NCBI GenBank assembly: GCA_047495785.1
Contig: JBLDXI010000136.1
Coordinates: forward strand, 1-18,845
Source: Lepidodermella squamata
Taxonomy: Eukaryota > Animalia > Gastrotricha
Direction: 5' to 3'
DNA length: 18,845 nt
Made by a program: the position numbers and the translations under genes. How positions within the stretch are numbered: position 1 is the first letter of the stretch; every line of letters starts with the position of its first letter. This document shows, piece by piece, positions 1-18,845 of this stretch. The notes under the pieces were generated by a model, which was not told the DNA's origin, ran no database searches, and worked only from the letters and a program-made list of their open reading frames with translations.

Positions 1-626
1 TAGTGTCTATTCCTCCAAGCGATAAACAGCCGGTGTTCTATGCGCAATCAGTAGGACGGGCAGGATGCCAGCCCGCGCCGCCAGTTCGAGTAGCCGCCGC
101 GCAAGAATCAGTTCGAGCAGCGCTTGGCAATCGTCGGCAGCAGCGAGACCGGCCGATATCCGATATCCGTCTGTTGTCGACAACAATATTTCTCAATTTG
201 CTCTTAATTTCATGTGTTTGATTGCGTCAAATGTCTGCTGTCAAACTTGCTGTGAAACGGCGCGTTTCTGCTGTAGCCGGTTGCAGAGGATAAGAGTTCG
301 GGTTCGGGGTCATCTGCGGCGTCGGACTTAGGGATTCCAAAATTATGGCGCAAACCTCGTTGACTAGGTAAATCTAGAACTCTTGGTCGAGACTTATTAG
401 ACAACTCTGAATCAACTCCGCTAGGTCAAACGATACGCCGAGCGCGTTGCCGAAGTTGCAGAAGGAGCAAGAATCGCCAACAGCAAGAGTCGCAACTTCA
501 ACCACAACAACAGAAGCAGCAACCACAAAACAACATGCTGATGGCTGTGATGATGCGATTCTTAGCGCAGCGGCTGCTGATCGATAATTCTGAAGTTGTG
601 CTGAGTGCATGCCGCTGCTCAATAGC

Positions 627-676
627 GCCGCCACCGCAGCATCGTTGCGTGCGCCAGTCACCGGCCGTTTTCCCCT
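627..676 (+). repeat. ~50-bp direct repeat, copy 1 (copy 2 at 1872-1920)
   Basis: gccgccaccgcagcatcgttgcgtgcgccagtcaccggccgttttcccct versus gccgccgccgcagcatcggtgcgtgcgccaatcaccggccgtttcccct: 3 substitutions and 1 indel. Confidence 0.85.
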
Positions 677-1359
677 TTCGGTGACTCAGCATTGTGCTTT
701 GAAATTCGTGCGATAAACTGTTGCAGGTTAGGTTGCGCTGCCAAACCTTTTTCCGAACACCATGCCAAGTTCAGGTTTTATCTGGGTCGAAGTCAGAGTT
801 CCTCCAGAAATTGCTGGTTCGGCGTCTCGATAGGGCATAAGCCAGGGTTTCAACTGGTATAGGTTGAGTTCGCCAAATTTGAACTGGCAACTTCGTGTCG
901 CCAACATTTGCCGCAACACCCGGGCGAACCTCGGCACAGCCGAATAGCGAAGACCATGCGAATACCCGGGCGCCGTGCTTGGACACAGCCGCGCCAGTGT
1001 AGACATCGAAAAAGCGAAGGTCGGACCCGACTAACAACCGGCTGTAGTCGTGTAAGGGGTGTAGCGGCTCTTTCGGCTGAAATAATCGCCGGCATTCTTG
1101 AACGGCGCAGGCCAGCGAGGCGATGGCGCAGGTTGCAAGGGTCGCGCGCATTCGCTCTCTTTCGCGCCCCGCTGTGTATAAGCGCGATGCGCGCATGCAA
1201 TTGTTGTTCTCGTTCATTCTCGCTCCCGTTCGCTCCCCTTCCTAGTGCTGGTGTAAACGCGCGTGAAGTTTTGTAAAGGCCGAGAATTATACTGCTGACA
1301 GCCGCGTATTTGAGCAGGCTGTTTTCTGTGTTGAGCAGTCCCAAACATTTCAGTGCCTA

Positions 1360-2060
1360 GTAGGCCTTCAACCTTCGACGCAGCATCAAGCCGTGGTCGT
1401 TGATGACCAGTGACTTGGTTGGCCCGCTCGCGCCATCGGCGCAGCACAGCCTCTTAACCTTCATCGACGCATTCACGAAGTACGCGACCGCCGTCCCGCT
1501 TCGTCCCGCTAAAATGCGAGTTCGAAAGTTCGAAATGCCCGAAGAGTTCATCTCGAACGTCGATGGCGCGGTGATGCAGGCCTTTTGCACCGCACTTAGG
1601 CATTAGGAGACGCCGCACCACTGCCTACAACACGAAGAGCAACTCCGTGCTCGCATGGCATACGACATGCTGTCGTTGCTGAAATTAACCGCTCATGTGG
1701 CACCACATGTCACAGGTAATGTTCGCACGGCTGCGCTGAAGCCACAGGCGTGTCACCGCACGACGCCGCGTTTGTCATGTTCACAAGTTTGTGGCCGGTT
1801 TCGCACACCGGCGATGTCCGCCCAGACACAACTTCGAGCAAAACGCCTCGACAATTTACACAAAATCGTTTGCCGCCGCCGCAGCATCGGTGCGTGCGCC
1901 AATCACCGGCCGTTTCCCCTCGTGCAGCGACCAGTTCTGATCCGCGCTACGACGGACCTTACGTCGTCGTGTGGTACGACAAGGCGAAAAGCAGCATCGC
2001 CGACCCCGCTGATCAGTCCGTTGAAACCATTAACAAACAGCGCCTGATGCGCTTTCTGGC
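1360..2060 (+). mobile_element. Degenerate Ty3/Gypsy LTR-retrotransposon pol remnant (integrase core plus GPY/F C-terminal motif), frameshifted
   Basis: Plus-strand translation gives KPWSLMTSDLVGPLAPS..LLTFIDAFTKYATAVPL..FEMPEEFISN..VMQAFCTAL. After a frameshift near 1598 it reads GIRRRRTTAYNTKSNSV, then SPHDAAF and DPRYDGPYVV...TINKQRLMRF. These match retroviral-type integrase motifs (DxxGP, xIDxFTKY, TTAYHPQSNG) and the Gypsy GPY/F motif. The second catalytic Asp and the Glu appear lost. The GC-richer region 1-1360 may be further decayed gag/pol (e.g. NWYRLSSPNL resembles NYYRRFIPNF) but is not firmly assignable. Confidence 0.8.
1872..1920 (+). repeat. ~50-bp direct repeat, copy 2 (copy 1 at 627-676)
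   Basis: Direct alignment with 627-676; lies between the integrase core and the GPY/F motif. Confidence 0.85.
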
Positions 2061-2223
2061 ATCCGCTCAACATGCAGCATCAGCACCATCACTGATATGA
2101 ACTGACCTCTTCATTTTTCGAACGTGTTTTTTATTCGATACGCCGCGCTTTTATACGGCCGGGTGCATGACCTTGCAGAATTCATCTCTGATTATTCGTT
2201 GGTATGTCCAAGATGTAGTAAAA

Positions 2224-2243
2224 TTTATTGAATCAAGTTTATT
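2224..2243 (-). promoter_or_regulatory. Candidate polyadenylation signals (two AATAAA on the minus strand) for the astacin gene
   Basis: tttatt at 2224-2229 and 2238-2243, about 140-155 nt downstream of the TGA at 2380-2382. Confidence 0.45.
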
Positions 2244-2379
2244 GAAAATAACATCAAACTATTTTTCATCAACCGAGACTTTCATAAAAATTAACCGGGT
2301 TGGAAGGAACGAGTCGAATGTTAACGGATTAAGGACTGGATGCAAGCCTATAAATAAGATCATGTATGTTTGACAATCC

Positions 2380-5195
2380 TCAGCAATAAAGCTGTGAAAT
2401 TTTCAGGTAATCCAGTGGCGTGGGCAGCTTTGAATCGCCAAGTTGCAAAGAATCGCTAGCTCGCGCTCTCATAGTTCTTAGCCCAGCCTGCTTGGCAAAG
2501 GCGCTGCCCGAATAATGCGTTATTGAAGAAATATCATATTTCACTGAAAGAATGCGCTCATCTATTGAAGCAAATGCGACGAAAAACGGTTCCGCAGAAT
2601 CGTCTATGTTTTCCCAGAAAACTTCTATATAACTATCGCGATCTGGCCGCCGGTGCTCATCTGGAATTCCAGCTGTCACCAAAAATGCTAAATAGATGAA
2701 ATAACTTGAAGTAAAGCACGAGTCGTCCGGAAGAACGATTGTTTGCCTGCCGCCCTTCCGACCATAGAAAGATGCTCTACAGGCACCGCCTGGAGTAGAG
2801 CCATTCGCCGATCGCAAGAATTCTACGTAATCCGACTCATTCGCTCGAGGTAAAAGCTTCAGGCAAGTTTTCGAGTTGAAATCACGTAATGAAGACCAAA
2901 TCTTGAGATTTTCCGCCCTTGAAAACAGCTGATCATTCAGGACATAAGGAATTCTAGCGCCTGGCCACAGATCTGGCTTCATCTCTAACGAGGGTTGCGT
3001 TTCTGGATTGTCGATAGTTTCGATGAAGTCGACATTGCCATTGAAAACACTCTTCTTGGGCGAATATGGTACTGAGGCGTCAGATGCTGGAGGGACATCC
3101 TTCCAGTACTGTGTACTGCAGTTGTAGAGGCGAATTATTTTGGCGTAGTCTAGTGGGGTGGCTCCGATTCTGTTTCCAAGAACTGCTGATGCGTTCTCTT
3201 TCGAAACTATGGTTGCTAAAGATCTGCTTTTTGCGAAAGCACTGCCGCTGTAGTGCAACACCGATTGCGAATCGTACGGAACCGACATAACTCTCCAATC
3301 CATGGATTCAAACTTTTGAAAAGATTCCAAGTGGCCGTCGGCGATACTTTGCGATTGAATGGAGACATACTCATCGCGATCCGGCCGCCGATGCTCAGCA
3401 TCCAGCCCGAGTATGTGAAAAATGATCCAGAACAGCAAGGGTCGAGTGAAGCAACTACCAGGATACAGAGTTACGACTTGCCTTCCGCCTATTTTACCAC
3501 TTCTCGCGAAGCATTCACTGGGGGTAAGTTGAAAATACACATAATCGACATCGGCGCTTTGCCGCGGCCGAAATTTGACGCAGGTTTTTGAGTTAACTTC
3601 GGCAATTACGGAGTTGATTGCCGCTTGCTGCTCTTCCGAGAGTTTTGGGTCGAGGACAAAAGGGATGTCACCGTTCTCCCAGATACGAGGTCGAAACGCT
3701 GCACTTCTTGGCAATATCGATTCAGTTATCGGTTTTACGGTTCCAGAGCAATATAAATTAGCAACCTTCTGCCAGTCCGATATTACGGGGCCTTGCAAAT
3801 TTCCGAGCGTTGGCACGGTAGTGGCGTTTGTTTTCGGTTGCATCGTCTTAAGACCCCGTCGTGCGGCAAAAGCGTTTTCACGGTAATGCATCACTGAGCC
3901 GTAGTCATAACGAACAGAGGTAAGCAAGTTGTCCATGGTAGGATACTTGACGAATTGTTCTCTGTAAGCCGGGTCGATGTTTTCGGTCAAAATCGAAATG
4001 AACTGATCCCTGCAAGTTTCGCTAATTTATAAGCATGTTAAATAAAACATCAACTCTCCCGTTACCTGTCAGGTCTCTGGTGTTCATGGAACAGTCCAAC
4101 TGTATGGAGAAGCTCGTGAGAAATGGTGCTTTTATCAAAACAGCTATCGGCCAAATGCACCCGATGCTTGCCGGCATAGAAACCTATCCTTTGCGAGGTG
4201 CAGCCTTCCGCCGTGTGGACGAATTCGACGAAATCAGGTTCGTCATTGCGCCTTCGAAAATTGACACAAGTACGGCGGAACAGATCCTCAAGAATCCGAA
4301 GAAGGAACGATTGCTGCATAACGGAGAAACCAGGCCTTATTACGTAAGGAATTGCCGCTCCAGGCCAAGTTCGGGCTTTTGAGGGAGACTCAACATTTAC
4401 GCTCCTGTTCGAAAGTGTCGTAGTATTCGGGCGGAGATTGCATGATGAGTTGTAGATTTCGATGTCATCGAGCCCCAATTGCCCGTCTCCAGAGTCCAAG
4501 TAAAAAACAACCCTAGCCCGAGATGTGTTGCGGGGGAGTACGATTTGAACGGTTGTAGCTAGCCAGCTCCAAGTCATCGGCCAACGCCCATTTTCTGACC
4601 ATACACTTTGAATCGAAGCATTGTTGAAGAAGTAATATCCGTCGTTGGCGGAATTCTGCCTCTTCACCAAAACAAATGCTCTCATCCGGCCTGGTTCGGA
4701 AGTCATAAGCCGATAGTAATACGAGAAACATAGCGTCTGAGTTGGTCTATTAGTCGCGAAACTAACTTCCGGTGACATGACGTAGATCTTGGCGGGTTTT
4801 CCGACGGAGAGGAACGAGATTTGCATGGTGCTTCTGTCAATACCGCCGTCTGGTATGTTTTCAATCTCGAGACGATAATCGCCGATGGCGCTAGGCCAGT
4901 GTGGCGTCTCTGCTAGGGGGAAGTAGTAATCACCGGTGGAAGAGAGTTCGTTGTCGACCTGCCAGATCCGCCAACCACTGCACCTTTGCTCGCTGTTGTA
5001 ATAATCGAAATCGCAAGCACTTTCCGGATCGCGGCCAGTGGGCGGAAACAAAAGCGAGGCTGGGGCGTAGTACCAGCCTTCGAGGCTGTCTGATTCTCCG
5101 CTGTCGTCATCGAGACGAGTACTTGCGGTTAATTTTTTTACAATTGCCGTAGTGATAATGAGAAAAAACAACAGTTTAAGATTGCAATAATACAT
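2380..5195 (-). CDS. Secreted astacin-family (M12A) zinc metalloprotease: signal peptide + MAM + 3 tandem astacin domains; exons 5195-4066 and 4009-2380, ~919 aa
   Basis: ATG at 5195 (MYYCNLKLLFFLIITTAIV, hydrophobic signal). MAM motifs: CDFD..C.GW, MSP, LCFSYYY, LGLDDIEI...C. Zinc signature HELLHTVGLFHEHQRPDR is joined by a 56-nt GT-AG intron (4065-4010) to DQFISIL, restoring canonical RPDRD. Met-turn YDYGSVMHY. Two further astacin-like repeats (WENGDIPF...LYNC; WPGARIPY...LYC). Joins ORF-track ORFs 4062..5219 and 2380..3990. Confidence 0.93.
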
Positions 5196-5613
5196 TTTCA
5201 GGTGTTTATTAGGCTGCAATATCGTTCCTTATAGGCTGGTGCGAATGTAAAAAAAATAAGAACCTTTCTTCAGATCAGGTACATAGGCATATATTGCTTT
5301 GGAAATAACACGGTCGCCCGCACTGAGCGCGCAATGAGATAAAGTGAAGTGGGTTTTTGATTATATTATTTAACTATTTCTCAACTACTCCTCCTCGCCT
5401 ATCGGCCCAAGAACCAATGCGTGCTACTATTCACTTGTGCCATCGCTCATGTAATTAGATTTTTCTTTATTGCATTGAAAGCTTTTTTGTCCAGCACTTT
5501 AATTTGAATTTGCGACATGTATGTTTTACATGGATGCAAAAAACTGACGTCTCAATTATATCTCTTACAAGTACTTATGACCCGAATGCAGTGAGGACAC
5601 CGTCTAGTAGTAC

Positions 5614-5628
5614 ATATATATATATATA
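5614..5628. repeat. Short (AT)n microsatellite; mirror at 15880-15894
   Basis: atatatatatatata, same length in both arms. Confidence 0.8.
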
Positions 5629-6856
5629 CCGGCGTTTCTGAAAGACCTTATTCTCTAGAGACGCGCGAGGTCATAATTATTGATATATCGTGCGGTAATT
5701 TTTTCCAGTACAAATCTTAATTACTTAATTACTGCAAACTGTGAAAATTGATAATTTTACCTAATAGCTCTTACCTTATAGCCTTAGTATGAAAATACTA
5801 TATTCCGCGCAATAATCATCTCCCAGGGTTTCAACGTTCAGCTTGAGATATTGACCCTAAGGGACATGATTCCCCGGACATCATTGGCTATTAGCACCGA
5901 GCACACTGTTTATCACAATATATTTCAATTTAATTTCGTTTCATTGGATACAATTACTAGTGCGTGTGTTTTTTGGCGGACGCGGCTATGAACTCGTGAC
6001 GCAAGACACGGGGGCGCTTTGGTGACTATTATTGGTATGAGGCCCGTGAATTGCGAAAATAAACCGTCGTCTTCGACTCGAAAAAGAGCGCAACTTTTAC
6101 AATTATCTGAATTACGTTAAACCGAACCGCACGGCCTATTTATCAGATCATCATTCTATACTGCGCCGCGATCGACGAAATTTTTTGCGCAGGGCGACTT
6201 ATTTTTTTTTTAAGTAAACGTCGCTCATGCGCGATTAATGCGCAACGAGACAAAGATCGAGAAACAATCTCCGGAGAGGCAAATTGAATAATGGGATGAA
6301 CGAGAAACTAGATGACATCGGGCCGTGTACTCCCCATATAACCACATGGTCGTTCAGTACTTGGTCGGTTTAAATATTACTCCATTAAAGCAAAATTTAA
6401 ATCTTACTAAAACATGGCGGCTATTCTGCGTTTAACTGGTCGAGATTGGCTATATGTCGCCATGTCCGATCACGCATCGAACTTCAGATCGCAGCGGCGG
6501 ACGCGCGGGCCGTGTCGACGACTATTGAAACGCGCCGCGTTCTAGTATGCTTGGAGGCTGTAAATTTGTAATGCGCAGGCGGCGGGAATGGTAGCCTAAA
6601 CAAATCAGGGGCGTCCGCTAGCCGATTGATTTGCTTTTTTTTTATGACATCGCGAAAGTCAGCCTTCAGCCATTACAACACATTTTGACGTAGTTTGCCC
6701 AAGCTATAACTGGTTTGGCTGTTAGACTGGGACACGTATTTCAGTTTTGGCCAGTTTTTGATTTTTTCCGATATGCTTTTTTCCTAAAACAGTTCAAACG
6801 ACTTTTAGGCAGGGTTCTGACACTTGAGGGCACTTCGAGGGCCCCGTAGCTGCCCA

Positions 6857-6890
6857 CTAGGCCTGAGTGTCTGCCGGTGCGGCCACCGGC
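6857..6890 (-). mobile_element. Possible Helitron-like 3' terminus (GC hairpin + CTAG|T); mirror at 14618-14651 (+)
   Basis: Read on the mirror copy: gccggtg-gccg-caccggc (7-bp stem), 12 nt, then CTAG followed by T. The 5' end was not identified. Confidence 0.3.
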
Positions 6891-8218
6891 CGTGTAGTAC
6901 CTATACGGTTCGATATTTGACAAAAAATACATGAAAAATGTCTTATTATAGCTATCACATTGTAAAGTTACGCACTTTGCATTCTGTACACGGACGTATT
7001 CGAGCAAAAACTCAGATAAGCCGTAAATGGGGGTCTCAAAAAGTGCTCTATTATGCGCTAATCCGAGAACCCGAAAATCTCCTTAAATAACTTAATTTTG
7101 CGTTTTTTGTAATCGAAATTTTCACCAGGGATGATTTAACCGAATCTTTATCTAACTTGAGATTTTTTACTTCTTTTTTTCTTTTCTGCAATAATTTGCT
7201 GAGTTCTCCTTAGTCCTTAGTCAAACATTAAGTTAAATTTTTTGGCCTAATTAAGATGGAATCCGTGTAAAGATTCCAAGGCAGCGAGGCAGTGAGTGTT
7301 TGCAGTGGGTCAATATTACATTTTTAACATCGTCGCAATTCGCGACCCAGCCAAGTCGATTACGAAAACACCGTTATGTTTGTATTTGTTTATATTTGAC
7401 ACGCACGTGTGATTTTCGATTTCAGACTTGCATTCTGCCATATTCTATGTATTATTAACTTGTGCCTCTGATTAATGTTTTACAACCATTGGCCATGCGT
7501 AAAAAGAGCAGCAGAGCACTTTTAGCGGAGAGTGGCCGCCCTCTAATGCGCGCGACACAGTCCTGAAATGCGCGTATGTGATTTCATGCGATTTCAACAA
7601 ATCATGACCTGAATATTGCATAGCGATCTCTCGTATTCGTATCATGCGCGTAGAACATGTTTGGAATGCGTTGCTCTGCACTTCATTGTATAAAAAAACT
7701 TGGCTAGTTTCGTGGGCACTCAAGCTTATCGTTGCTTCCGAGAGCTGGACGTGCAGTATTCAGATGGCTTGGTAGCACTCAATTCGGCCTTATAGCACCT
7801 CTATGAAATAATTCGGGGTGTTTAAATATTATTTCTCACCTGACATATGTTATTTGCATACTCATGAATTTCTTACAACCTCCGCTTATTTTCAGCACCC
7901 CGAGATAAAAGCCGATACTAAATTGTTTAGTTATTCTGACACTTTGGTTGTAGTACCAGCGAATAAAGTCACGCACTTCACGCCTTGCTTCAAAATATTT
8001 GCGCTTATCGGGTAGCCCTATGGGCACGATTGATCAATGCTTATTTAATTGTCAAAAGCGAAAGCCAATTTTGAACGAGTTGTTATCTTTCAATAGGACA
8101 GTTACGGCTATATACTAAACAATTTTCGCCGACTTTCTTTCCTATTTATAGAAATATTTACGTTTGAATGGCTAAAAAGATGGATGTTTTGCTCATGGAA
8201 CCGGAATAATTGAGCTGG

Positions 8219-10888
8219 ATGCGTTCGTCGAACATGTCTCGAGGTAACGCATGGTTCATAGCTAATTGTTCAACGGGTCATTTCTGCAAGCAATTCTTGC
8301 GATTACTTCTATTCATTTGTATCACCGAGTCGGTAAGATCAGGCAGCAACCACGGCGGCAAATCTGTTGCTTCTGCGCCACCCTTATTTTCCGGCGTCAA
8401 TAATCAAGCTCAGCCGACAAAGCGAAGCAAAGGGGCTGGTAAGTATAATTTTAATATTTTCTGCGGCAAGTGTGAAGTTTTGCTAAGAAAAACTATTAAT
8501 CGCTAAATCAGTTGGAGAAAAGCCTACCGTGATCCTAAAAGCACTCAGCCTACAACCAGCTGTAGAAGGTATTACAACCATCCCTTCTGCCACTTTGACG
8601 CATTCCTATGGCACCATGACCTCTTTATTTACCTTTATTTCGTGATTCGGGGATGCTTTAATGTTAACTTTCAACTTTACCCTATTTGTTTTAATTTTAA
8701 TATCAACCAACTATCTATATAGACAATGGGGAGTTCGCGGGGCAATATTCAGCTGAATACTCCCTCTATCAACGATTGCTGGGGTCGAGCCGTTACCAAA
8801 AGCACGTTCGGCCGGTTCGTGATCACCACCAGCCGATCAAAGTCAAGGCAAGTAACCTAATATATGCCCATATATGCCAATTATTCCATAATTTCTCAGG
8901 TGGGTATGTGCGTTATGATGATCGAAGAAATCGTAAGTAATCCCAGCAATTATATTGCCGAATGTCTTATCAATGAACTTTCAAGATTGAGCGAGATCAA
9001 ATCATGACAATGGCAGCATGCATCAAAATGGTAAGTTGAATAGGATTAACTTAACAATTAAATCTCATTATTTCTTATTTTTTAATAGAAATGGACAGGT
9101 ATGATTTTTAAAAGCTTCATCGAAGGAACCGACTAACCATATCAACTTATAGACGACTTTTTAGTTTGGAAACCAGAGGTATGTCTTGATGCCGGGTTGA
9201 AATCTAGGTCATTTTTCTAATTTCCAGAGCTATGACAATCTAACATGGCTAGCAATATCCTCCGCCAACATTTGGCTACCTGATATAGCTATCATAAACT
9301 CACCCGAGCCGTACGAGCTAACGAGAAAATCCACAAATGTCGATGTCGACTATCACGGCGAGGTTGGATTCTTCCCGTCAGGACGCCTCGCCACCCGATG
9401 CAACCTTCAGATTACTTACTTCCCATTCGATTGGCAACATTGCGAAGTCAGACTTGAATCATGGATATACCCTACCCAATACCTTGAGATCGAAATGTAC
9501 CCTGATGATACTGTAGACCTTAAGGAGTACTACACGAATCATCAGTGGGCAGTCGCGGGGTATCGTGTTCTGCCGGAAGTTGCCGACTACGACGGCAAAA
9601 ACTTCTCTTCAATAACTTTCACATTCATACTTCGAAGAAAATCTGAGTAAGAAAGTTTCTGTAAAATGCTCTCCATATTTTACCAACTATTCATCCAGGT
9701 ATTACTTCATGTACTTCATCTTCCCTCAACTCCTATTAGCGCTGCTGCAAACTCTTTCCCATACGCTACCAGTCGAACACCCGGGTCGAATGGCTATGCT
9801 GACTAGTCTTTTCATCGGCACATCTGTGACACAAGCCGGTGTCGCTGTACATATTCCTAAGGTAAAGATGCTTTTCACATCTTAAAGACTCCTCTACTTT
9901 GTCTTTATTTTAGTCATCTGATTCGATGTCACTGTTGCAAATATACATGACAATAATGAGTATCAACCTGGTGCTCGCTCTCATTGTCACTTTTGTGATG
10001 ATGTACGCCGTCCTCAGATACCCGAATGAGGAGCCTTCTTTCATAGCCATGATGGTAGCTTTCTTCAGTATAGTCTGGCCCAATGAAAACGAAAAGCAGC
10101 GTGGCCTCCCAGTGGTGCCGGTTTTCCACAGGCGTCAGAGCATGGCGGCTAGACGTGGGTCCTCTCCCTACGTTGTGGTCGACGATGTACAAGGCTCGGC
10201 CTGGAAAAAGGGTTCAAAATCACCAGGCAGAGAGCGCGATGCAGAGAGCTCAAGATTTACGTCAGCCAGCCGGGATGCTTCTCAAAACGATGATAGGCAA
10301 CGTCGGAATCGGCAAAGAGGCGGCCAGAAAGGAAACGCTGATCGACCTGTTCAAATGAGCGAACGTGACATGATGAGTTTGAAAAGAGGACAGCAGCGCC
10401 CGAACCATGTTACAACCCCTCAAGGAAATAGAAGGGGCGACTCAATAAAACGGCTCACGTTCGCAGGGGATGACAGTGATGAAGAGGACTACGCTACCGC
10501 GACCCTTCCGAATTCGAACCGATCAAAGCATCATCCTTACTCTAACGGAACTATTCCTGGTCATCGAGGAGAAATGACCCTGAGCTTGCGATCACCCTTT
10601 ACGAATAGACGAACTGCTCCTAATACGGCAGACTCTTCGCCAGATATCACTGGCATGGGTTGCGACTTCTCACCCATGAATCCTAACGTTCTTTCGCCAA
10701 TGAATACTCCTTCCATGGTTGAGAATGGAACCCTTCGAGGTTCGGCCATGCGAGCCACCAAGTCCGCTGTAAAAACTGATAACCCGTTGATCCCTAGAAG
10801 AGGCTTGCAACGAACAAAGTCCGCGCGGGGCGAGGCAGCCTCGGCCGATGATACTCGAGAATTGAAGCGGAGATGGCTGCCGTATTAG
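8219..10888 (+). CDS. Cys-loop pentameric ligand-gated ion channel subunit, nAChR-like non-alpha, truncated before M4. Exons 8219-8438, 8512-8568, 8723-8847, 8900-8932, 8986-9030, 9089-9098, 9153-9178, 9228-9646, 9699-9861, 9914-10888 (~690 aa)
   Basis: Manual splicing gives AEYSLYQRLLGSSRYQKHVRPVRDHHQPIKVK-VGMCVMMIEEI-IERDQIMTMAACIKM-KWTDDFLVWKPE-SYDNLTWL..IWLPDIAIINS..., Cys-loop CNLQITYFPFDWQHC (C-x13-C, 9399-9443), ESWIY, NHQW, FILRRK, M1 YYFMYFIFPQLLLALLQTLSHTLP, M2 RMAMLTSLFIGTSVTQAGVAVHIP, M3 LLQIYMTIMSINLVLALIVTFVMMYAV. All intron phases are consistent. Exons 1-2 and the start codon (8219 vs 8234) are less certain than exons 3-10. Confidence 0.92.
8848..8899 (+). other. Non-canonical GC-AG intron (52 nt) in the channel gene; mirror at 12609-12660
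   Basis: AAG|gcaagt...ttctcag|GTG. This donor keeps the frame through the beta1-beta2 region; the nearby GT at 8852 does not. Confidence 0.85.
10632..10876. other. Unique 245-bp spacer (loop) of the palindrome; coding sequence of the channel M3-M4 loop on the + strand
   Basis: Complementarity breaks at 10632(a)/10876(g). The + reading frame stays open through the whole spacer. Confidence 0.95.
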
Positions 10889-13289
10889 GAGCAGTTCGTC
10901 TATTCGTAAAGGGTGATCGCAAGCTCAGGGTCATTTCTCCTCGATGACCAGGAATAGTTCCGTTAGAGTAAGGATGATGCTTTGATCGGTTCGAATTCGG
11001 AAGGGTCGCGGTAGCGTAGTCCTCTTCATCACTGTCATCCCCTGCGAACGTGAGCCGTTTTATTGAGTCGCCCCTTCTATTTCCTTGAGGGGTTGTAACA
11101 TGGTTCGGGCGCTGCTGTCCTCTTTTCAAACTCATCATGTCACGTTCGCTCATTTGAACAGGTCGATCAGCGTTTCCTTTCTGGCCGCCTCTTTGCCGAT
11201 TCCGACGTTGCCTATCATCGTTTTGAGAAGCATCCCGGCTGGCTGACGTAAATCTTGAGCTCTCTGCATCGCGCTCTCTGCCTGGTGATTTTGAACCCTT
11301 TTTCCAGGCCGAGCCTTGTACATCGTCGACCACAACGTAGGGAGAGGACCCACGTCTAGCCGCCATGCTCTGACGCCTGTGGAAAACCGGCACCACTGGG
11401 AGGCCACGCTGCTTTTCGTTTTCATTGGGCCAGACTATACTGAAGAAAGCTACCATCATGGCTATGAAAGAAGGCTCCTCATTCGGGTATCTGAGGACGG
11501 CGTACATCATCACAAAAGTGACAATGAGAGCGAGCACCAGGTTGATACTCATTATTGTCATGTATATTTGCAACAGTGACATCGAATCAGATGACTAAAA
11601 TAAAGACAAAGTAGAGGAGTCTTTAAGATGTGAAAAGCATCTTTACCTTAGGAATATGTACAGCGACACCGGCTTGTGTCACAGATGTGCCGATGAAAAG
11701 ACTAGTCAGCATAGCCATTCGACCCGGGTGTTCGACTGGTAGCGTATGGGAAAGAGTTTGCAGCAGCGCTAATAGGAGTTGAGGGAAGATGAAGTACATG
11801 AAGTAATACCTGGATGAATAGTTGGTAAAATATGGAGAGCATTTTACAGAAACTTTCTTACTCAGATTTTCTTCGAAGTATGAATGTGAAAGTTATTGAA
11901 GAGAAGTTTTTGCCGTCGTAGTCGGCAACTTCCGGCAGAACACGATACCCCGCGACTGCCCACTGATGATTCGTGTAGTACTCCTTAAGGTCTACAGTAT
12001 CATCAGGGTACATTTCGATCTCAAGGTATTGGGTAGGGTATATCCATGATTCAAGTCTGACTTCGCAATGTTGCCAATCGAATGGGAAGTAAGTAATCTG
12101 AAGGTTGCATCGGGTGGCGAGGCGTCCTGACGGGAAGAATCCAACCTCGCCGTGATAGTCGACATCGACATTTGTGGATTTTCTCGTTAGCTCGTACGGC
12201 TCGGGTGAGTTTATGATAGCTATATCAGGTAGCCAAATGTTGGCGGAGGATATTGCTAGCCATGTTAGATTGTCATAGCTCTGGAAATTAGAAAAATGAC
12301 CTAGATTTCAACCCGGCATCAAGACATACCTCTGGTTTCCAAACTAAAAAGTCGTCTATAAGTTGATATGGTTAGTCGGTTCCTTCGATGAAGCTTTTAA
12401 AAATCATACCTGTCCATTTCTATTAAAAAATAAGAAATAATGAGATTTAATTGTTAAGTTAATCCTATTCAACTTACCATTTTGATGCATGCTGCCATTG
12501 TCATGATTTGATCTCGCTCAATCTTGAAAGTTCATTGATAAGACATTCGGCAATATAATTGCTGGGATTACTTACGATTTCTTCGATCATCATAACGCAC
12601 ATACCCACCTGAGAAATTATGGAATAATTGGCATATATGGGCATATATTAGGTTACTTGCCTTGACTTTGATCGGCTGGTGGTGATCACGAACCGGCCGA
12701 ACGTGCTTTTGGTAACGGCTCGACCCCAGCAATCGTTGATAGAGGGAGTATTCAGCTGAATATTGCCCCGCGAACTCCCCATTGTCTATATAGATAGTTG
12801 GTTGATATTAAAATTAAAACAAATAGGGTAAAGTTGAAAGTTAACATTAAAGCATCCCCGAATCACGAAATAAAGGTAAATAAAGAGGTCATGGTGCCAT
12901 AGGAATGCGTCAAAGTGGCAGAAGGGATGGTTGTAATACCTTCTACAGCTGGTTGTAGGCTGAGTGCTTTTAGGATCACGGTAGGCTTTTCTCCAACTGA
13001 TTTAGCGATTAATAGTTTTTCTTAGCAAAACTTCACACTTGCCGCAGAAAATATTAAAATTATACTTACCAGCCCCTTTGCTTCGCTTTGTCGGCTGAGC
13101 TTGATTATTGACGCCGGAAAATAAGGGTGGCGCAGAAGCAACAGATTTGCCGCCGTGGTTGCTGCCTGATCTTACCGACTCGGTGATACAAATGAATAGA
13201 AGTAATCGCAAGAATTGCTTGCAGAAATGACCCGTTGAACAATTAGCTATGAACCATGCGTTACCTCGAGACATGTTCGACGAACGCAT
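10794..13289 (-). pseudogene. Mirror copy of the Cys-loop channel gene, more severely 3'-truncated (~632 aa). Exons 13289-13070, 12996-12940, 12785-12661, 12608-12576, 12522-12478, 12419-12410, 12355-12330, 12280-11862, 11809-11647, 11594-10794
   Basis: Identical to the + copy up to ...RRTAPNTA, then reads the spacer antisense (AISASILEYHRPRLPRPARTLFVASLF*). No MA helix or M4. Confidence 0.85.
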
Positions 13290-16200
13290 CCAGCTCAATT
13301 ATTCCGGTTCCATGAGCAAAACATCCATCTTTTTAGCCATTCAAACGTAAATATTTCTATAAATAGGAAAGAAAGTCGGCGAAAATTGTTTAGTATATAG
13401 CCGTAACTGTCCTATTGAAAGATAACAACTCGTTCAAAATTGGCTTTCGCTTTTGACAATTAAATAAGCATTGATCAATCGTGCCCATAGGGCTACCCGA
13501 TAAGCGCAAATATTTTGAAGCAAGGCGTGAAGTGCGTGACTTTATTCGCTGGTACTACAACCAAAGTGTCAGAATAACTAAACAATTTAGTATCGGCTTT
13601 TATCTCGGGGTGCTGAAAATAAGCGGAGGTTGTAAGAAATTCATGAGTATGCAAATAACATATGTCAGGTGAGAAATAATATTTAAACACCCCGAATTAT
13701 TTCATAGAGGTGCTATAAGGCCGAATTGAGTGCTACCAAGCCATCTGAATACTGCACGTCCAGCTCTCGGAAGCAACGATAAGCTTGAGTGCCCACGAAA
13801 CTAGCCAAGTTTTTTTATACAATGAAGTGCAGAGCAACGCATTCCAAACATGTTCTACGCGCATGATACGAATACGAGAGATCGCTATGCAATATTCAGG
13901 TCATGATTTGTTGAAATCGCATGAAATCACATACGCGCATTTCAGGACTGTGTCGCGCGCATTAGAGGGCGGCCACTCTCCGCTAAAAGTGCTCTGCTGC
14001 TCTTTTTACGCATGGCCAATGGTTGTAAAACATTAATCAGAGGCACAAGTTAATAATACATAGAATATGGCAGAATGCAAGTCTGAAATCGAAAATCACA
14101 CGTGCGTGTCAAATATAAACAAATACAAACATAACGGTGTTTTCGTAATCGACTTGGCTGGGTCGCGAATTGCGACGATGTTAAAAATGTAATATTGACC
14201 CACTGCAAACACTCACTGCCTCGCTGCCTTGGAATCTTTACACGGATTCCATCTTAATTAGGCCAAAAAATTTAACTTAATGTTTGACTAAGGACTAAGG
14301 AGAACTCAGCAAATTATTGCAGAAAAGAAAAAAAGAAGTAAAAAATCTCAAGTTAGATAAAGATTCGGTTAAATCATCCCTGGTGAAAATTTCGATTACA
14401 AAAAACGCAAAATTAAGTTATTTAAGGAGATTTTCGGGTTCTCGGATTAGCGCATAATAGAGCACTTTTTGAGACCCCCATTTACGGCTTATCTGAGTTT
14501 TTGCTCGAATACGTCCGTGTACAGAATGCAAAGTGCGTAACTTTACAATGTGATAGCTATAATAAGACATTTTTCATGTATTTTTTGTCAAATATCGAAC
14601 CGTATAGGTACTACACGGCCGGTGGCCGCACCGGCAGACACTCAGGCCTAGTGGGCAGCTACGGGGCCCTCGAAGTGCCCTCAAGTGTCAGAACCCTGCC
14701 TAAAAGTCGTTTGAACTGTTTTAGGAAAAAAGCATATCGGAAAAAATCAAAAACTGGCCAAAACTGAAATACGTGTCCCAGTCTAACAGCCAAACCAGTT
14801 ATAGCTTGGGCAAACTACGTCAAAATGTGTTGTAATGGCTGAAGGCTGACTTTCGCGATGTCATAAAAAAAAAGCAAATCAATCGGCTAGCGGACGCCCC
14901 TGATTTGTTTAGGCTACCATTCCCGCCGCCTGCGCATTACAAATTTACAGCCTCCAAGCATACTAGAACGCGGCGCGTTTCAATAGTCGTCGACACGGCC
15001 CGCGCGTCCGCCGCTGCGATCTGAAGTTCGATGCGTGATCGGACATGGCGACATATAGCCAATCTCGACCAGTTAAACGCAGAATAGCCGCCATGTTTTA
15101 GTAAGATTTAAATTTTGCTTTAATGGAGTAATATTTAAACCGACCAAGTACTGAACGACCATGTGGTTATATGGGGAGTACACGGCCCGATGTCATCTAG
15201 TTTCTCGTTCATCCCATTATTCAATTTGCCTCTCCGGAGATTGTTTCTCGATCTTTGTCTCGTTGCGCATTAATCGCGCATGAGCGACGTTTACTTAAAA
15301 AAAAAATAAGTCGCCCTGCGCAAAAAATTTCGTCGATCGCGGCGCAGTATAGAATGATGATCTGATAAATAGGCCGTGCGGTTCGGTTTAACGTAATTCA
15401 GATAATTGTAAAAGTTGCGCTCTTTTTCGAGTCGAAGACGACGGTTTATTTTCGCAATTCACGGGCCTCATACCAATAATAGTCACCAAAGCGCCCCCGT
15501 GTCTTGCGTCACGAGTTCATAGCCGCGTCCGCCAAAAAACACACGCACTAGTAATTGTATCCAATGAAACGAAATTAAATTGAAATATATTGTGATAAAC
15601 AGTGTGCTCGGTGCTAATAGCCAATGATGTCCGGGGAATCATGTCCCTTAGGGTCAATATCTCAAGCTGAACGTTGAAACCCTGGGAGATGATTATTGCG
15701 CGGAATATAGTATTTTCATACTAAGGCTATAAGGTAAGAGCTATTAGGTAAAATTATCAATTTTCACAGTTTGCAGTAATTAAGTAATTAAGATTTGTAC
15801 TGGAAAAAATTACCGCACGATATATCAATAATTATGACCTCGCGCGTCTCTAGAGAATAAGGTCTTTCAGAAACGCCGGTATATATATATATATGTACTA
15901 CTAGACGGTGTCCTCACTGCATTCGGGTCATAAGTACTTGTAAGAGATATAATTGAGACGTCAGTTTTTTGCATCCATGTAAAACATACATGTCGCAAAT
16001 TCAAATTAAAGTGCTGGACAAAAAAGCTTTCAATGCAATAAAGAAAAATCTAATTACATGAGCGATGGCACAAGTGAATAGTAGCACGCATTGGTTCTTG
16101 GGCCGATAGGCGAGGAGGAGTAGTTGAGAAATAGTTAAATAATATAATCAAAAACCCACTTCACTTTATCTCATTGCGCGCTCAGTGCGGGCGACCGTGT

Positions 16201-18845
16201 TATTTCCAAAGCAATATATGCCTATGTACCTGATCTGAAGAAAGGTTCTTATTTTTTTTACATTCGCACCAGCCTATAAGGAACGATATTGCAGCCTAAT
16301 AAACACCTGAAAATGTATTATTGCAATCTTAAACTGTTGTTTTTTCTCATTATCACTACGGCAATTGTAAAAAAATTAACCGCAAGTACTCGTCTCGATG
16401 ACGACAGCGGAGAATCAGACAGCCTCGAAGGCTGGTACTACGCCCCAGCCTCGCTTTTGTTTCCGCCCACTGGCCGCGATCCGGAAAGTGCTTGCGATTT
16501 CGATTATTACAACAGCGAGCAAAGGTGCAGTGGTTGGCGGATCTGGCAGGTCGACAACGAACTCTCTTCCACCGGTGATTACTACTTCCCCCTAGCAGAG
16601 ACGCCACACTGGCCTAGCGCCATCGGCGATTATCGTCTCGAGATTGAAAACATACCAGACGGCGGTATTGACAGAAGCACCATGCAAATCTCGTTCCTCT
16701 CCGTCGGAAAACCCGCCAAGATCTACGTCATGTCACCGGAAGTTAGTTTCGCGACTAATAGACCAACTCAGACGCTATGTTTCTCGTATTACTATCGGCT
16801 TATGACTTCCGAACCAGGCCGGATGAGAGCATTTGTTTTGGTGAAGAGGCAGAATTCCGCCAACGACGGATATTACTTCTTCAACAATGCTTCGATTCAA
16901 AGTGTATGGTCAGAAAATGGGCGTTGGCCGATGACTTGGAGCTGGCTAGCTACAACCGTTCAAATCGTACTCCCCCGCAACACATCTCGGGCTAGGGTTG
17001 TTTTTTACTTGGACTCTGGAGACGGGCAATTGGGGCTCGATGACATCGAAATCTACAACTCATCATGCAATCTCCGCCCGAATACTACGACACTTTCGAA
17101 CAGGAGCGTAAATGTTGAGTCTCCCTCAAAAGCCCGAACTTGGCCTGGAGCGGCAATTCCTTACGTAATAAGGCCTGGTTTCTCCGTTATGCAGCAATCG
17201 TTCCTTCTTCGGATTCTTGAGGATCTGTTCCGCCGTACTTGTGTCAATTTTCGAAGGCGCAATGACGAACCTGATTTCGTCGAATTCGTCCACACGGCGG
17301 AAGGCTGCACCTCGCAAAGGATAGGTTTCTATGCCGGCAAGCATCGGGTGCATTTGGCCGATAGCTGTTTTGATAAAAGCACCATTTCTCACGAGCTTCT
17401 CCATACAGTTGGACTGTTCCATGAACACCAGAGACCTGACAGGTAACGGGAGAGTTGATGTTTTATTTAACATGCTTATAAATTAGCGAAACTTGCAGGG
17501 ATCAGTTCATTTCGATTTTGACCGAAAACATCGACCCGGCTTACAGAGAACAATTCGTCAAGTATCCTACCATGGACAACTTGCTTACCTCTGTTCGTTA
17601 TGACTACGGCTCAGTGATGCATTACCGTGAAAACGCTTTTGCCGCACGACGGGGTCTTAAGACGATGCAACCGAAAACAAACGCCACTACCGTGCCAACG
17701 CTCGGAAATTTGCAAGGCCCCGTAATATCGGACTGGCAGAAGGTTGCTAATTTATATTGCTCTGGAACCGTAAAACCGATAACTGAATCGATATTGCCAA
17801 GAAGTGCAGCGTTTCGACCTCGTATCTGGGAGAACGGTGACATCCCTTTTGTCCTCGACCCAAAACTCTCGGAAGAGCAGCAAGCGGCAATCAACTCCGT
17901 AATTGCCGAAGTTAACTCAAAAACCTGCGTCAAATTTCGGCCGCGGCAAAGCGCCGATGTCGATTATGTGTATTTTCAACTTACCCCCAGTGAATGCTTC
18001 GCGAGAAGTGGTAAAATAGGCGGAAGGCAAGTCGTAACTCTGTATCCTGGTAGTTGCTTCACTCGACCCTTGCTGTTCTGGATCATTTTTCACATACTCG
18101 GGCTGGATGCTGAGCATCGGCGGCCGGATCGCGATGAGTATGTCTCCATTCAATCGCAAAGTATCGCCGACGGCCACTTGGAATCTTTTCAAAAGTTTGA
18201 ATCCATGGATTGGAGAGTTATGTCGGTTCCGTACGATTCGCAATCGGTGTTGCACTACAGCGGCAGTGCTTTCGCAAAAAGCAGATCTTTAGCAACCATA
18301 GTTTCGAAAGAGAACGCATCAGCAGTTCTTGGAAACAGAATCGGAGCCACCCCACTAGACTACGCCAAAATAATTCGCCTCTACAACTGCAGTACACAGT
18401 ACTGGAAGGATGTCCCTCCAGCATCTGACGCCTCAGTACCATATTCGCCCAAGAAGAGTGTTTTCAATGGCAATGTCGACTTCATCGAAACTATCGACAA
18501 TCCAGAAACGCAACCCTCGTTAGAGATGAAGCCAGATCTGTGGCCAGGCGCTAGAATTCCTTATGTCCTGAATGATCAGCTGTTTTCAAGGGCGGAAAAT
18601 CTCAAGATTTGGTCTTCATTACGTGATTTCAACTCGAAAACTTGCCTGAAGCTTTTACCTCGAGCGAATGAGTCGGATTACGTAGAATTCTTGCGATCGG
18701 CGAATGGCTCTACTCCAGGCGGTGCCTGTAGAGCATCTTTCTATGGTCGGAAGGGCGGCAGGCAAACAATCGTTCTTCCGGACGACTCGTGCTTTACTTC
18801 AAGTTATTTCATCTATTTAGCATTTTTGGTGACAGCTGGAATTCC
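10877..18845. repeat. Right arm of giant inverted repeat (runs off the window end)
   Basis: ctgccgtattaggagcagttc at 10877 is the reverse complement of gaactgctcctaatacggcag ending at 10631. The mirror register holds to the last base of the window. Confidence 0.99.
16313..18845 (+). CDS. Mirror copy of the MAM + triple-astacin protease gene (exon 16313-17442, intron 17443-17498, exon 17499->18845; cut off by the window end in domain 3)
   Basis: Reverse complement of 2663-5195. Donor AG|gtaacg at 17443, acceptor ttgcag|G at 17498. Confidence 0.92.

What the first reader, a model, noticed from the sequence alone, without database searches (positions are those of the whole stretch)
2663..18845. 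Gene-containing giant palindrome: apparently identical arms of at least 8 kb around a 245-bp loop
Seen: the mirror symmetry covers exons, introns and the 3-kb intergenic region with zero net indel, and no mismatch turned up in my spot checks (not a full base-by-base comparison). Inference: such identity means a very recent fold-back inversion (breakage-fusion-bridge or template switching), ongoing arm-to-arm gene conversion, or a technical chimera. Established: phi29 whole-genome amplification and long-read fold-backs produce this inverted geometry. If real, it doubles a protease gene while destroying the 3' end of a channel gene.
Basis: partly seen in the sequence, partly recalled or inferred. 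Interest (0 to 1): 0.8.

Follow-up and report, generated by a model that had tools for sequence, protein, structure and literature searches.

The report
Fold-back amplification chimera, not real palindrome
The perfect 8-kb mirror repeat is really in the sequence, but independent DNA and RNA data read straight past its centre into the normal end of an ion-channel gene, so it is almost certainly a laboratory fold-back copy that survived assembly as a small contig.

Summary
Arms 2663-10631 and 10877-18845 (7,969 nt) are 100% complementary around a 245-nt spacer, and the right arm stops only because the window ends.

In two independent public data sets (X1, DNA-like, depth about 80; X2, spliced RNA), a contig follows the left arm and the spacer to 10880. 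It then runs on for 1,935 nt (X1) or 314 nt (X2) into different sequence.

That sequence encodes LLYCVALDKTI. This is the conserved pre-M4 motif of a related Cys-loop channel, whose protein goes on to M4. No contig shows the fold-back, and arm depth is not doubled.

The junction is inverted, lands 241-245 nt upstream, and has 4 nt of complementarity (CTGC/GCAG). That is the published signature of phi29 multiple-displacement chimeras.

The scan found this before on other DNA of the same genome. Unchecked first-stage notes list several other read-sized palindromic pieces and embedded PacBio barcodes. Circumstantial evidence points to an MDA plus PacBio HiFi assembly of a microscopic animal.

Verdict: a technical fold-back chimera, not a real feature. 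It is of interest only for assembly quality control.

The parts
1..2662 (.). Unique left flank with no mirror copy in the window. It holds the last 94 codons and stop of the astacin gene (2380-2662, - strand) and about 2.4 kb of GC-richer sequence (GC 0.52) without long ORFs.
2663..10631 (+). Left arm. This is taken as the genuine genomic template strand. Independent contigs lie on the sampled part of it (7855-10631, directly or through its mirror image).
10632..10876 (+). The 245-nt 'loop'. It is genuine coding sequence of the channel's M3-M4 cytoplasmic loop, contiguous with the left arm in independent DNA-like and RNA contigs. It is not an adapter or a spacer of its own kind.
10877..10880 (+). 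CTGC, shared by the true continuation and by the reverse-complement copy. It pairs with GCAG at 10628-10631. This is the 4-nt priming complementarity of the fold-back junction.
10877..18845 (-). Right arm. It is an exact reverse-complement copy of 2663-10631 made by copying the first strand, and it ends at the end of the window. It is regarded as artefactual.
2380..5219 (-). Astacin-family gene with a signal-like N-terminus and a MAM domain. It has one astacin domain with an intact zinc site (HELLHTVGLFHEH), split by a ~71-nt intron (about 3991-4061). Two further astacin domains have lost the zinc-binding histidines.
9495..10880 (+). 3' part of a Cys-loop (nicotinic-type) channel gene: end of the ligand-binding domain, M1-M3 and the long cytoplasmic loop. 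RNA contigs show introns at 9650-9701 and 9860-9911. The M4-coding end is missing from the window.

Best explanation
The window is a small contig built from one or a few chimeric DNA molecules made in the laboratory. While a + strand of this locus was being copied by a strand-displacing polymerase, its growing 3' end (...GATGGCTGC-3', at 10880) came loose. It annealed through 4 nt (CTGC on GCAG, 10628-10631) to the complementary sequence about 245 nt upstream, either on itself or on a displaced sister strand. The end was then extended backwards. This produced an exact reverse-complement copy of everything upstream: a hairpin-like palindrome with a 245-nt loop. The most likely polymerase is phi29 during multiple displacement amplification of DNA from a microscopic animal. 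High-accuracy consensus sequencing read the molecule faithfully. The assembler could not merge it with the true locus and left it as a read-sized contig.

Shown: the exact symmetry, the 4-nt complementarity, the normal continuation of the locus in independent data, and the absence of depth doubling.

Inferred: the polymerase and step at which the fold-back arose, and the identity of the assembly. The assembly is probably the MDA + HiFi assembly of the gastrotrich Lepidodermella squamata.
For: (1): the X1 contig (3,126 nt, depth 79.5) matches 9690-10880 and then runs on 1,935 nt unlike the window. The X2 contig (1,506 nt, spliced over intron 9860-9911, hence RNA) matches to 10880 and runs on 314 nt. 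Both loose ends read TATACTGTGTAGCGCTTGATAAAACGATTA. No contig shows the fold-back joint.
(2): in frame this continuation gives RRWL-LYCVALDKTI; the related channel P0001 (PF02932; 73% identical over M3) has RRWLLYCVALDKVL followed by a hydrophobic M4. The window's frame instead gives RRWLPY-stop.
(3): no 12-mer of the continuation occurs anywhere in the window.
(4): the arm-only X1 contig has depth 82.5, against 79.5 for a contig that is 70% outside the arms. The arms are therefore not at double depth.
(5): 0 mismatches in 7,969 nt, as expected if one arm was copied from the other in a single molecule.
(6) Junction anatomy fits Lasken & Stockwell 2007 (PMC1855051). There, 85% of MDA chimeras were inversions, mostly less than 10 kb apart, and 93.5% of those had complementarity of 2 bp or more at the junction.
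(7) MDA plus PacBio gives 12-48% palindromic reads against 0.5% without amplification (PMC6218980). It gives up to 70% chimeric HiFi reads and thousands of misassemblies (bioRxiv 10.64898/2026.06.11.730069).
(8): 54 first-stage notes on palindromes in this genome. They include five other pieces of 12-20 kb described as giant palindromes with arms 'at least' 7.8-8.4 kb, and two notes of an embedded PacBio barcode. These are unverified leads.
(9): the L. squamata MDA-HiFi assembly has 157 contigs, GC 43.3%, 83x coverage and mean read length 13.4 kb, and C. elegans was sequenced in the same study. The scan counts 147 pieces, the left arm has GC 0.44, X1 depth is about 80, and X3 (same study as X1) has 100.6 M letters.
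Against: No raw reads of the source library could be laid, so the number of molecules carrying the junction is unknown. Logan contigs drop rare variants and collapse branches, so a minority or heterozygous fold-back allele in X1 cannot be excluded. X1 differs from the window at 3 of 1,191 positions, so it may be another haplotype or individual. The depth comparison uses one mean figure per contig, and the tool warns that this is not a copy number. Microhomology at the junction is also typical of biological fold-back inversions. The link to the L. squamata MDA assembly is circumstantial. That paper reported no chimeric contigs, but by a screen that only flags reads whose two ends map to different contigs. 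A recent survey found virtually no fold-backs in unamplified HiFi data (PMC12870357), so the explanation depends on the library having been amplified.
Confidence: 0.9

Rival explanations
1. A real, very recent germline inverted duplication (fold-back inversion) exists in the sequenced strain. It could be heterozygous or an extra copy beside the intact locus.
For: Exact symmetry with microhomology is also what a fresh replication-based or breakage-fusion fold-back would give. X1 differs from the window at a few sites, so the window could be a second haplotype that contigs of X1 collapsed away.
Against: Both independent data sets continue normally past 10880 without a branch. Arm depth is not raised (82.5 against 79.5). 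The contig is read-sized, asymmetric, and ends inside an exon of the copied protease gene. According to unverified first-stage notes, many similar read-sized palindromes, some with sequencing barcodes inside, occur in the same assembly. That points to a process acting on library molecules, not on chromosomes.
Confidence: 0.04
2. A real but rare somatic fold-back molecule (replication template switch, hairpin-capped break or breakage-fusion-bridge intermediate in some cells) was captured by chance and sequenced.
For: It cannot be told from an in-vitro fold-back by sequence alone, because the geometry and microhomology are the same. It would also be a minority form, as observed.
Against: The prior is low compared with the very high rate of such molecules in amplified long-read libraries (PMC6218980; PMC1855051). 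One rare somatic molecule would need to be amplified to yield a contig.
Confidence: 0.04
3. A sequencing or assembly artefact without a chimeric molecule: a read with a missed SMRTbell hairpin adapter, or an assembler joining a read to its own reverse complement.
For: Missed adapters are a known source of palindromic PacBio reads (PMC6218980). The contig is read-sized.
Against: A missed adapter gives a zero-length loop with adapter sequence at the centre. Here the centre is 245 nt of genuine exon sequence confirmed by independent contigs. An assembler join would need an overlap, and the two sides share only 4 nt at the joint.
Confidence: 0.02

Closest known systems
Inverted chimeras of phi29 multiple displacement amplification (Lasken & Stockwell 2007, PMC1855051) and the palindromic long reads they cause (Pacasus, Warris et al. 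2018, PMC6218980)
   Same: Two segments of one locus are joined in opposite orientation. The second segment starts a short distance (241-245 nt) upstream of the first one's end. There are 4 nt of complementarity at the priming site, the arms are identical, and the structure is read-sized.
   Different: Here the chimera is not just a read but has survived as a contig of a released assembly. The use of MDA for this library is inferred, not shown.
Fold-back artefacts in unamplified long-read libraries (Breakinator survey, PMC12870357)
   Same: The read aligns to the same place on both strands, with or without sequence between the two segments.
   Different: That survey found about 0.55-0.6% fold-backs in nanopore genomic DNA but virtually none in unamplified PacBio HiFi. 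An unamplified HiFi library would therefore be an unlikely source.
Biological palindromes kept identical by arm-to-arm gene conversion (primate Y chromosome P1-P8)
   Same: Gene-bearing inverted arms of at least 8 kb with a short unique spacer and near-perfect identity.
   Different: Those show doubled arm depth and are found in every individual. Here the arms are at single-copy depth, and independent DNA and RNA continue past the centre into other sequence.
Palindromes reported in the first Adineta vaga draft assembly
   Same: Gene-containing palindromes were reported in the draft genome of a microscopic invertebrate and read as biology. The relevant papers were listed but not read here. That the later chromosome-level assembly did not confirm them is my own recollection.

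Membership tests
MDA (phi29) inverted chimera | Two segments of the genome joined in inverted orientation | tested here: met
   arms are exact reverse complements.
MDA (phi29) inverted chimera | Segments lie close together in the genome (mostly less than 10 kb), with a small intervening segment | tested here: met
   The 3' end at 10880 re-primed at 10631, 241-245 nt upstream.
MDA (phi29) inverted chimera | [quoted passage not shown] | tested here: met
   CTGC (10877-10880) is shared by the true continuation and the copy. It pairs with GCAG at 10628-10631.
MDA (phi29) inverted chimera | Junction absent from, or a small minority in, independent data, and the genome continues normally | tested here: met
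   X1 and X2 contigs continue past 10880 into M4-type coding sequence. Only contigs were available, not raw reads.
MDA (phi29) inverted chimera | The sequenced DNA was amplified by strand-displacement synthesis | not testable with these tools
   Inferred from the match of scan and run metadata to PMC11660948. The window's origin is not disclosed.
Biological palindrome maintained by gene conversion | Arms at twice the depth of spacer and flanks | tested here: not met
   arm-only contig 82.5, against 79.5 for a contig of arm plus spacer plus 1,935 nt beyond. The caveat is that there is one mean depth figure per contig.
Biological palindrome maintained by gene conversion | Junction reproducible in independent samples | tested here: not met
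   neither of two studies shows it.
Biological palindrome maintained by gene conversion | Both arms end against unique flanking sequence | not testable with these tools
   The right arm runs into the end of the window at 18845.
Missed SMRTbell adapter read | Adapter sequence at the centre with no genomic loop | tested here: not met
   The centre is 245 nt of exon confirmed by X1 and X2.
Cys-loop ligand-gated channel subunit (gene cut by the junction) | Transmembrane region M1-M3, long cytoplasmic loop, then M4 | tested here: met
   M1-M3 and the loop are in the window and are 73% identical over M3 to P0001, which carries PF02932. M4 is absent from the window. Its start is seen in the run contigs and the whole M4 in the relative.
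Astacin metalloprotease, M12A (gene copied in the arms) | Astacin domain with the HExxHxxGxxH zinc site | tested here: met
   Pfam PF01400 at E=2.2e-83 and 3.3e-21. HELLHTVGLFHEH is in the first domain. The second and third domains lack the histidines (read by eye).

The most novel reading that the evidence does not exclude
The fold-back is a real DNA molecule of the animal. It could be a germline or somatic palindrome formed in vivo by a hairpin or template-switch event. The many read-sized palindromes noted in this genome would then reflect a genuine propensity of this organism to form gene-bearing palindromes, for example during DNA repair or programmed rearrangement.
Probability: 0.05. Interest if true: 0.7.

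Novelty: not a real feature. Interest (0 to 1): 0.1.

Why it matters
As biology it does not matter: no protease gene is doubled and no channel gene is broken in the animal. It matters as quality control. A released long-read assembly of a microscopic animal appears to hold a class of read-sized fold-back contigs. These create false gene duplications, false truncated genes and false 'giant palindromes'. A screen that only asks whether a read's two ends map to different contigs cannot see them. All small contigs of this assembly that are self-complementary should be treated as suspect, and the other palindrome findings of this scan on the same genome should be judged in that light.

Tried and rejected
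(1) SMRTbell adapter and barcode bc1003 searches in the window found none.
(2) Rfam and tandem-repeat scans found nothing, so there is no structured RNA or repeat array at the centre.
(3) A word-based protein search with the channel ORF gave only one relative, P0001, from metagenome contigs. It gave no protein from the source organism, so the full true 3' end could be read only as the 30 letters shown by read laying plus the relative's protein.
(4) The search of earlier findings by place and by sequence was blank.
(5) X2 contigs show several other inverted joints about 100 nt apart inside the channel gene. I asked whether they support a real palindrome and rejected the idea. None lies at 10876/10877, their ends are not splice-like, the pieces are 25-31 nt, and depths are 4-11. 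They look like library or graph artefacts of that RNA data set.
(6) The large representative protein search, structure prediction and fold search were not used, because both genes were identified by Pfam and by the relative.
Full report
**Observation.** The window contains one inverted repeat, with arms at 2663-10631 and 10877-18845. The arms are 7,969 nt long, 100% complementary, and separated by 245 nt. My own base-by-base comparison found 0 mismatches and no extension of the symmetry into the spacer. The right arm ends only because the window ends at 18845. The left side continues for 2,662 further unique bases, so the structure is asymmetric and its outer limit is unknown. An 18,845-base window is probably a whole small contig. 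That is an inference from the odd length.

**Content.** The left arm carries an astacin-family gene on the - strand (5219-2380). It has a signal-like start, a MAM domain and Astacin domains (Pfam E=2.2e-83 and 3.3e-21). Its last exon crosses the arm boundary at 2663, so the mirrored copy is cut inside an exon by the contig end.

On the + strand, exons of a Cys-loop channel run up to the centre:
- The end of the ligand-binding domain and pre-M1 (about 9495-9649).
- M1-M2 (9702-9859).
- An exon from 9912 on, which holds M3 and a long cytoplasmic loop.

The 245-nt 'loop' of the palindrome is simply the next part of that exon. The open frame reads ...RELKRRWL-PY-stop, ending 9 nt after the junction.

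**Decisive test.** Two public run sets from different studies hold this stretch. When they were laid on 7855-13654, neither showed the fold-back joint.
- X1 (2024) covers introns as well as exons, so it is DNA-like. Its 3,126-nt contig (depth 79.5) matches 9690-10880 and then continues for 1,935 nt unlike the window.
- X2 (2015) is spliced over the 52-nt introns 9650-9701 and 9860-9911, so it is RNA. Its 1,506-nt contig matches up to 10880 and continues for 314 nt.
- Both loose ends begin TATACTGTGTAGCGCTTGATAAAACGATTA.

In the channel's frame this gives RRWL-LYCVALDKTI. The one relative found by the protein word search is P0001, which carries PF02932 and is 73% identical over M3. At the same place it has RRWLLYCVALDKVL, followed by a hydrophobic M4 and the C-terminus, all in one uninterrupted ORF.

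So the real gene continues past 10880 into M4-coding sequence, and that sequence is nowhere in the window (no shared 12-mer).

**Depth.** An X1 contig lying only on arm sequence has mean word depth 82.5. The contig made of 942 nt of arm, the spacer and 1,935 nt beyond has 79.5. If the palindrome were real and homozygous, the arm words would be counted twice. The tool warns that these are per-contig means and not copy numbers, so I use this only as supporting evidence.

**Junction anatomy and mechanism.** The true sequence reads ...GATGG CTGC TATACTG..., and the window reads ...GATGG CTGC CGTATTAGG.... The four bases CTGC (10877-10880) are common to both. They are complementary to GCAG at 10628-10631, the inner end of the left arm. 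A 3' end at 10880 therefore annealed 241-245 nt upstream on a strand of opposite polarity and was extended.

This matches the chimeras of phi29 multiple displacement amplification described by Lasken & Stockwell (PMC1855051):
- 85% of those chimeras were inversions.
- Most inversions joined segments less than 10 kb apart.
- 93.5% of the proximal ones had complementarity of 2 bp or more (up to 21 bp) at the priming site.

Copying one arm from the other within a single molecule also explains the 0 mismatches in 8 kb.

**Such molecules dominate amplified long-read libraries.**
- 44-48% (Arabidopsis) and 12% (gorilla Y) of PacBio reads were palindromic after whole-genome amplification, against 0.5% without it. 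Uncorrected reads gave inverted duplications in assemblies (PMC6218980).
- Up to 70% of HiFi reads were chimeric, with thousands of misassemblies, in single-cell MDA (bioRxiv 10.64898/2026.06.11.730069).
- About a third of mitochondrial nanopore reads were palindromic in MDA of single tardigrades (PMC13265396).
- By contrast, unamplified HiFi data showed virtually no fold-backs (PMC12870357).

**Context in the same genome (leads, not evidence I could check).** The scan's notes for this genome include 54 that mention palindromes. Among them are five other pieces of 12-20 kb described as giant palindromes with arms 'at least' 7.8-8.4 kb and spacers of 0.85-2.8 kb. There is also a note on a fold-back junction with inverted microhomology, and two notes on a PacBio barcode embedded in an arm or an exon. 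A recurring class of read-sized palindromic contigs, some with library barcodes inside, points to a process acting on library molecules.

**Probable source (inference).** A 2024 paper describes MDA with phi29 followed by PacBio HiFi for C. elegans and the gastrotrich Lepidodermella squamata (PMC11660948). The features compare as follows:

|---|---|---|
| Contigs / pieces | 157 contigs | 147 pieces with notes so far |
| GC | 43.3% | 0.44 in the left arm |
| Coverage / depth | 83x | X1 depth about 80 |
| Companion organism | C. elegans in the same study | X3, same 2024 study as X1, 100.6 M letters (close to the C. elegans genome) |
| Mean HiFi read length | 13.4 kb | contig of 18.8 kb |

If this is the source, the authors' chimera checks would not have detected fold-backs. 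They flagged reads whose first and last 500 bp map to different contigs, and both ends of a fold-back read map to the same place. Their Alvis screen reported no chimeric contig in this assembly.

**Rivals.**
- A real germline or somatic fold-back cannot be excluded by contigs alone. Logan contigs drop minority variants, and X1 differs from the window at three sites in 1,191. It is unlikely, however, given the normal continuation in two studies, the undoubled depth, the read-sized asymmetric contig, and the high prior for amplification chimeras.
- A missed SMRTbell adapter is excluded by the 245 nt of genuine exon at the centre and the absence of adapter sequence.

**Verdict.** The doubled protease gene and the truncated channel gene are not properties of the animal. 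Interest is low except as a warning about this assembly and about the other palindrome findings on it.

Noticed in passing
window 2380-5219 (- strand; mirrored at 16289-18845): The astacin gene encodes a signal-like N-terminus, a MAM domain and three astacin domains in one protein. Only the first keeps the zinc site (HELLHTVGLFHEH). In the second (WIIFHILGLDAEH) and third (LAFLVTAGIPDEH) the zinc-binding histidines and the catalytic Glu are replaced. This makes one active protease domain followed by two pseudo-protease domains. The zinc sites were read by eye from the ORF translations.
   Followed up: partly
window 8253-9614 (left-arm coordinates), X2 contigs: The RNA data set X2 has several low-depth contigs (4-11x) whose last 25-31 letters switch strand about 100 nt away. 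The joints are 8439 to the complement of 8335, 9250 to that of 9352, 9329 to that of 9445, and 9510 to that of 9614. Their ends are non-canonical. They look like small fold-back artefacts of that cDNA library or of the contig graph and are not related to the 10876/10877 junction.
   Followed up: partly
window 1-2380: The unique left flank is GC-richer (0.52-0.57 against 0.44 in the arm). It has only short overlapping ORFs on both strands and no Pfam-size gene. Its nature (3' UTR, intergenic, repeat) was not examined.
   Followed up: no
window 9458, 10006, 10323, 10753, 10771 and 12497-12606: Single-base differences exist between the window and the X1 and X2 contigs. There is also a 108-nt X1 contig at about half depth (47) with 7 differences and a 2-nt gap. 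These fit a heterozygous diploid source, and the window may represent the haplotype not chosen by the run contigs.
   Followed up: no
L001 4001-5062 (ENA metagenome contig k141_645471) and L002, L003: A close relative of the channel gene lies on eukaryotic contigs in three environmental metagenome assemblies. There the final exon runs from M1/M2 through the loop to M4 without an intron, and a nuclear-receptor-like gene (faint zf-C4) lies downstream. A related microscopic animal is evidently present in those samples.
   Followed up: no
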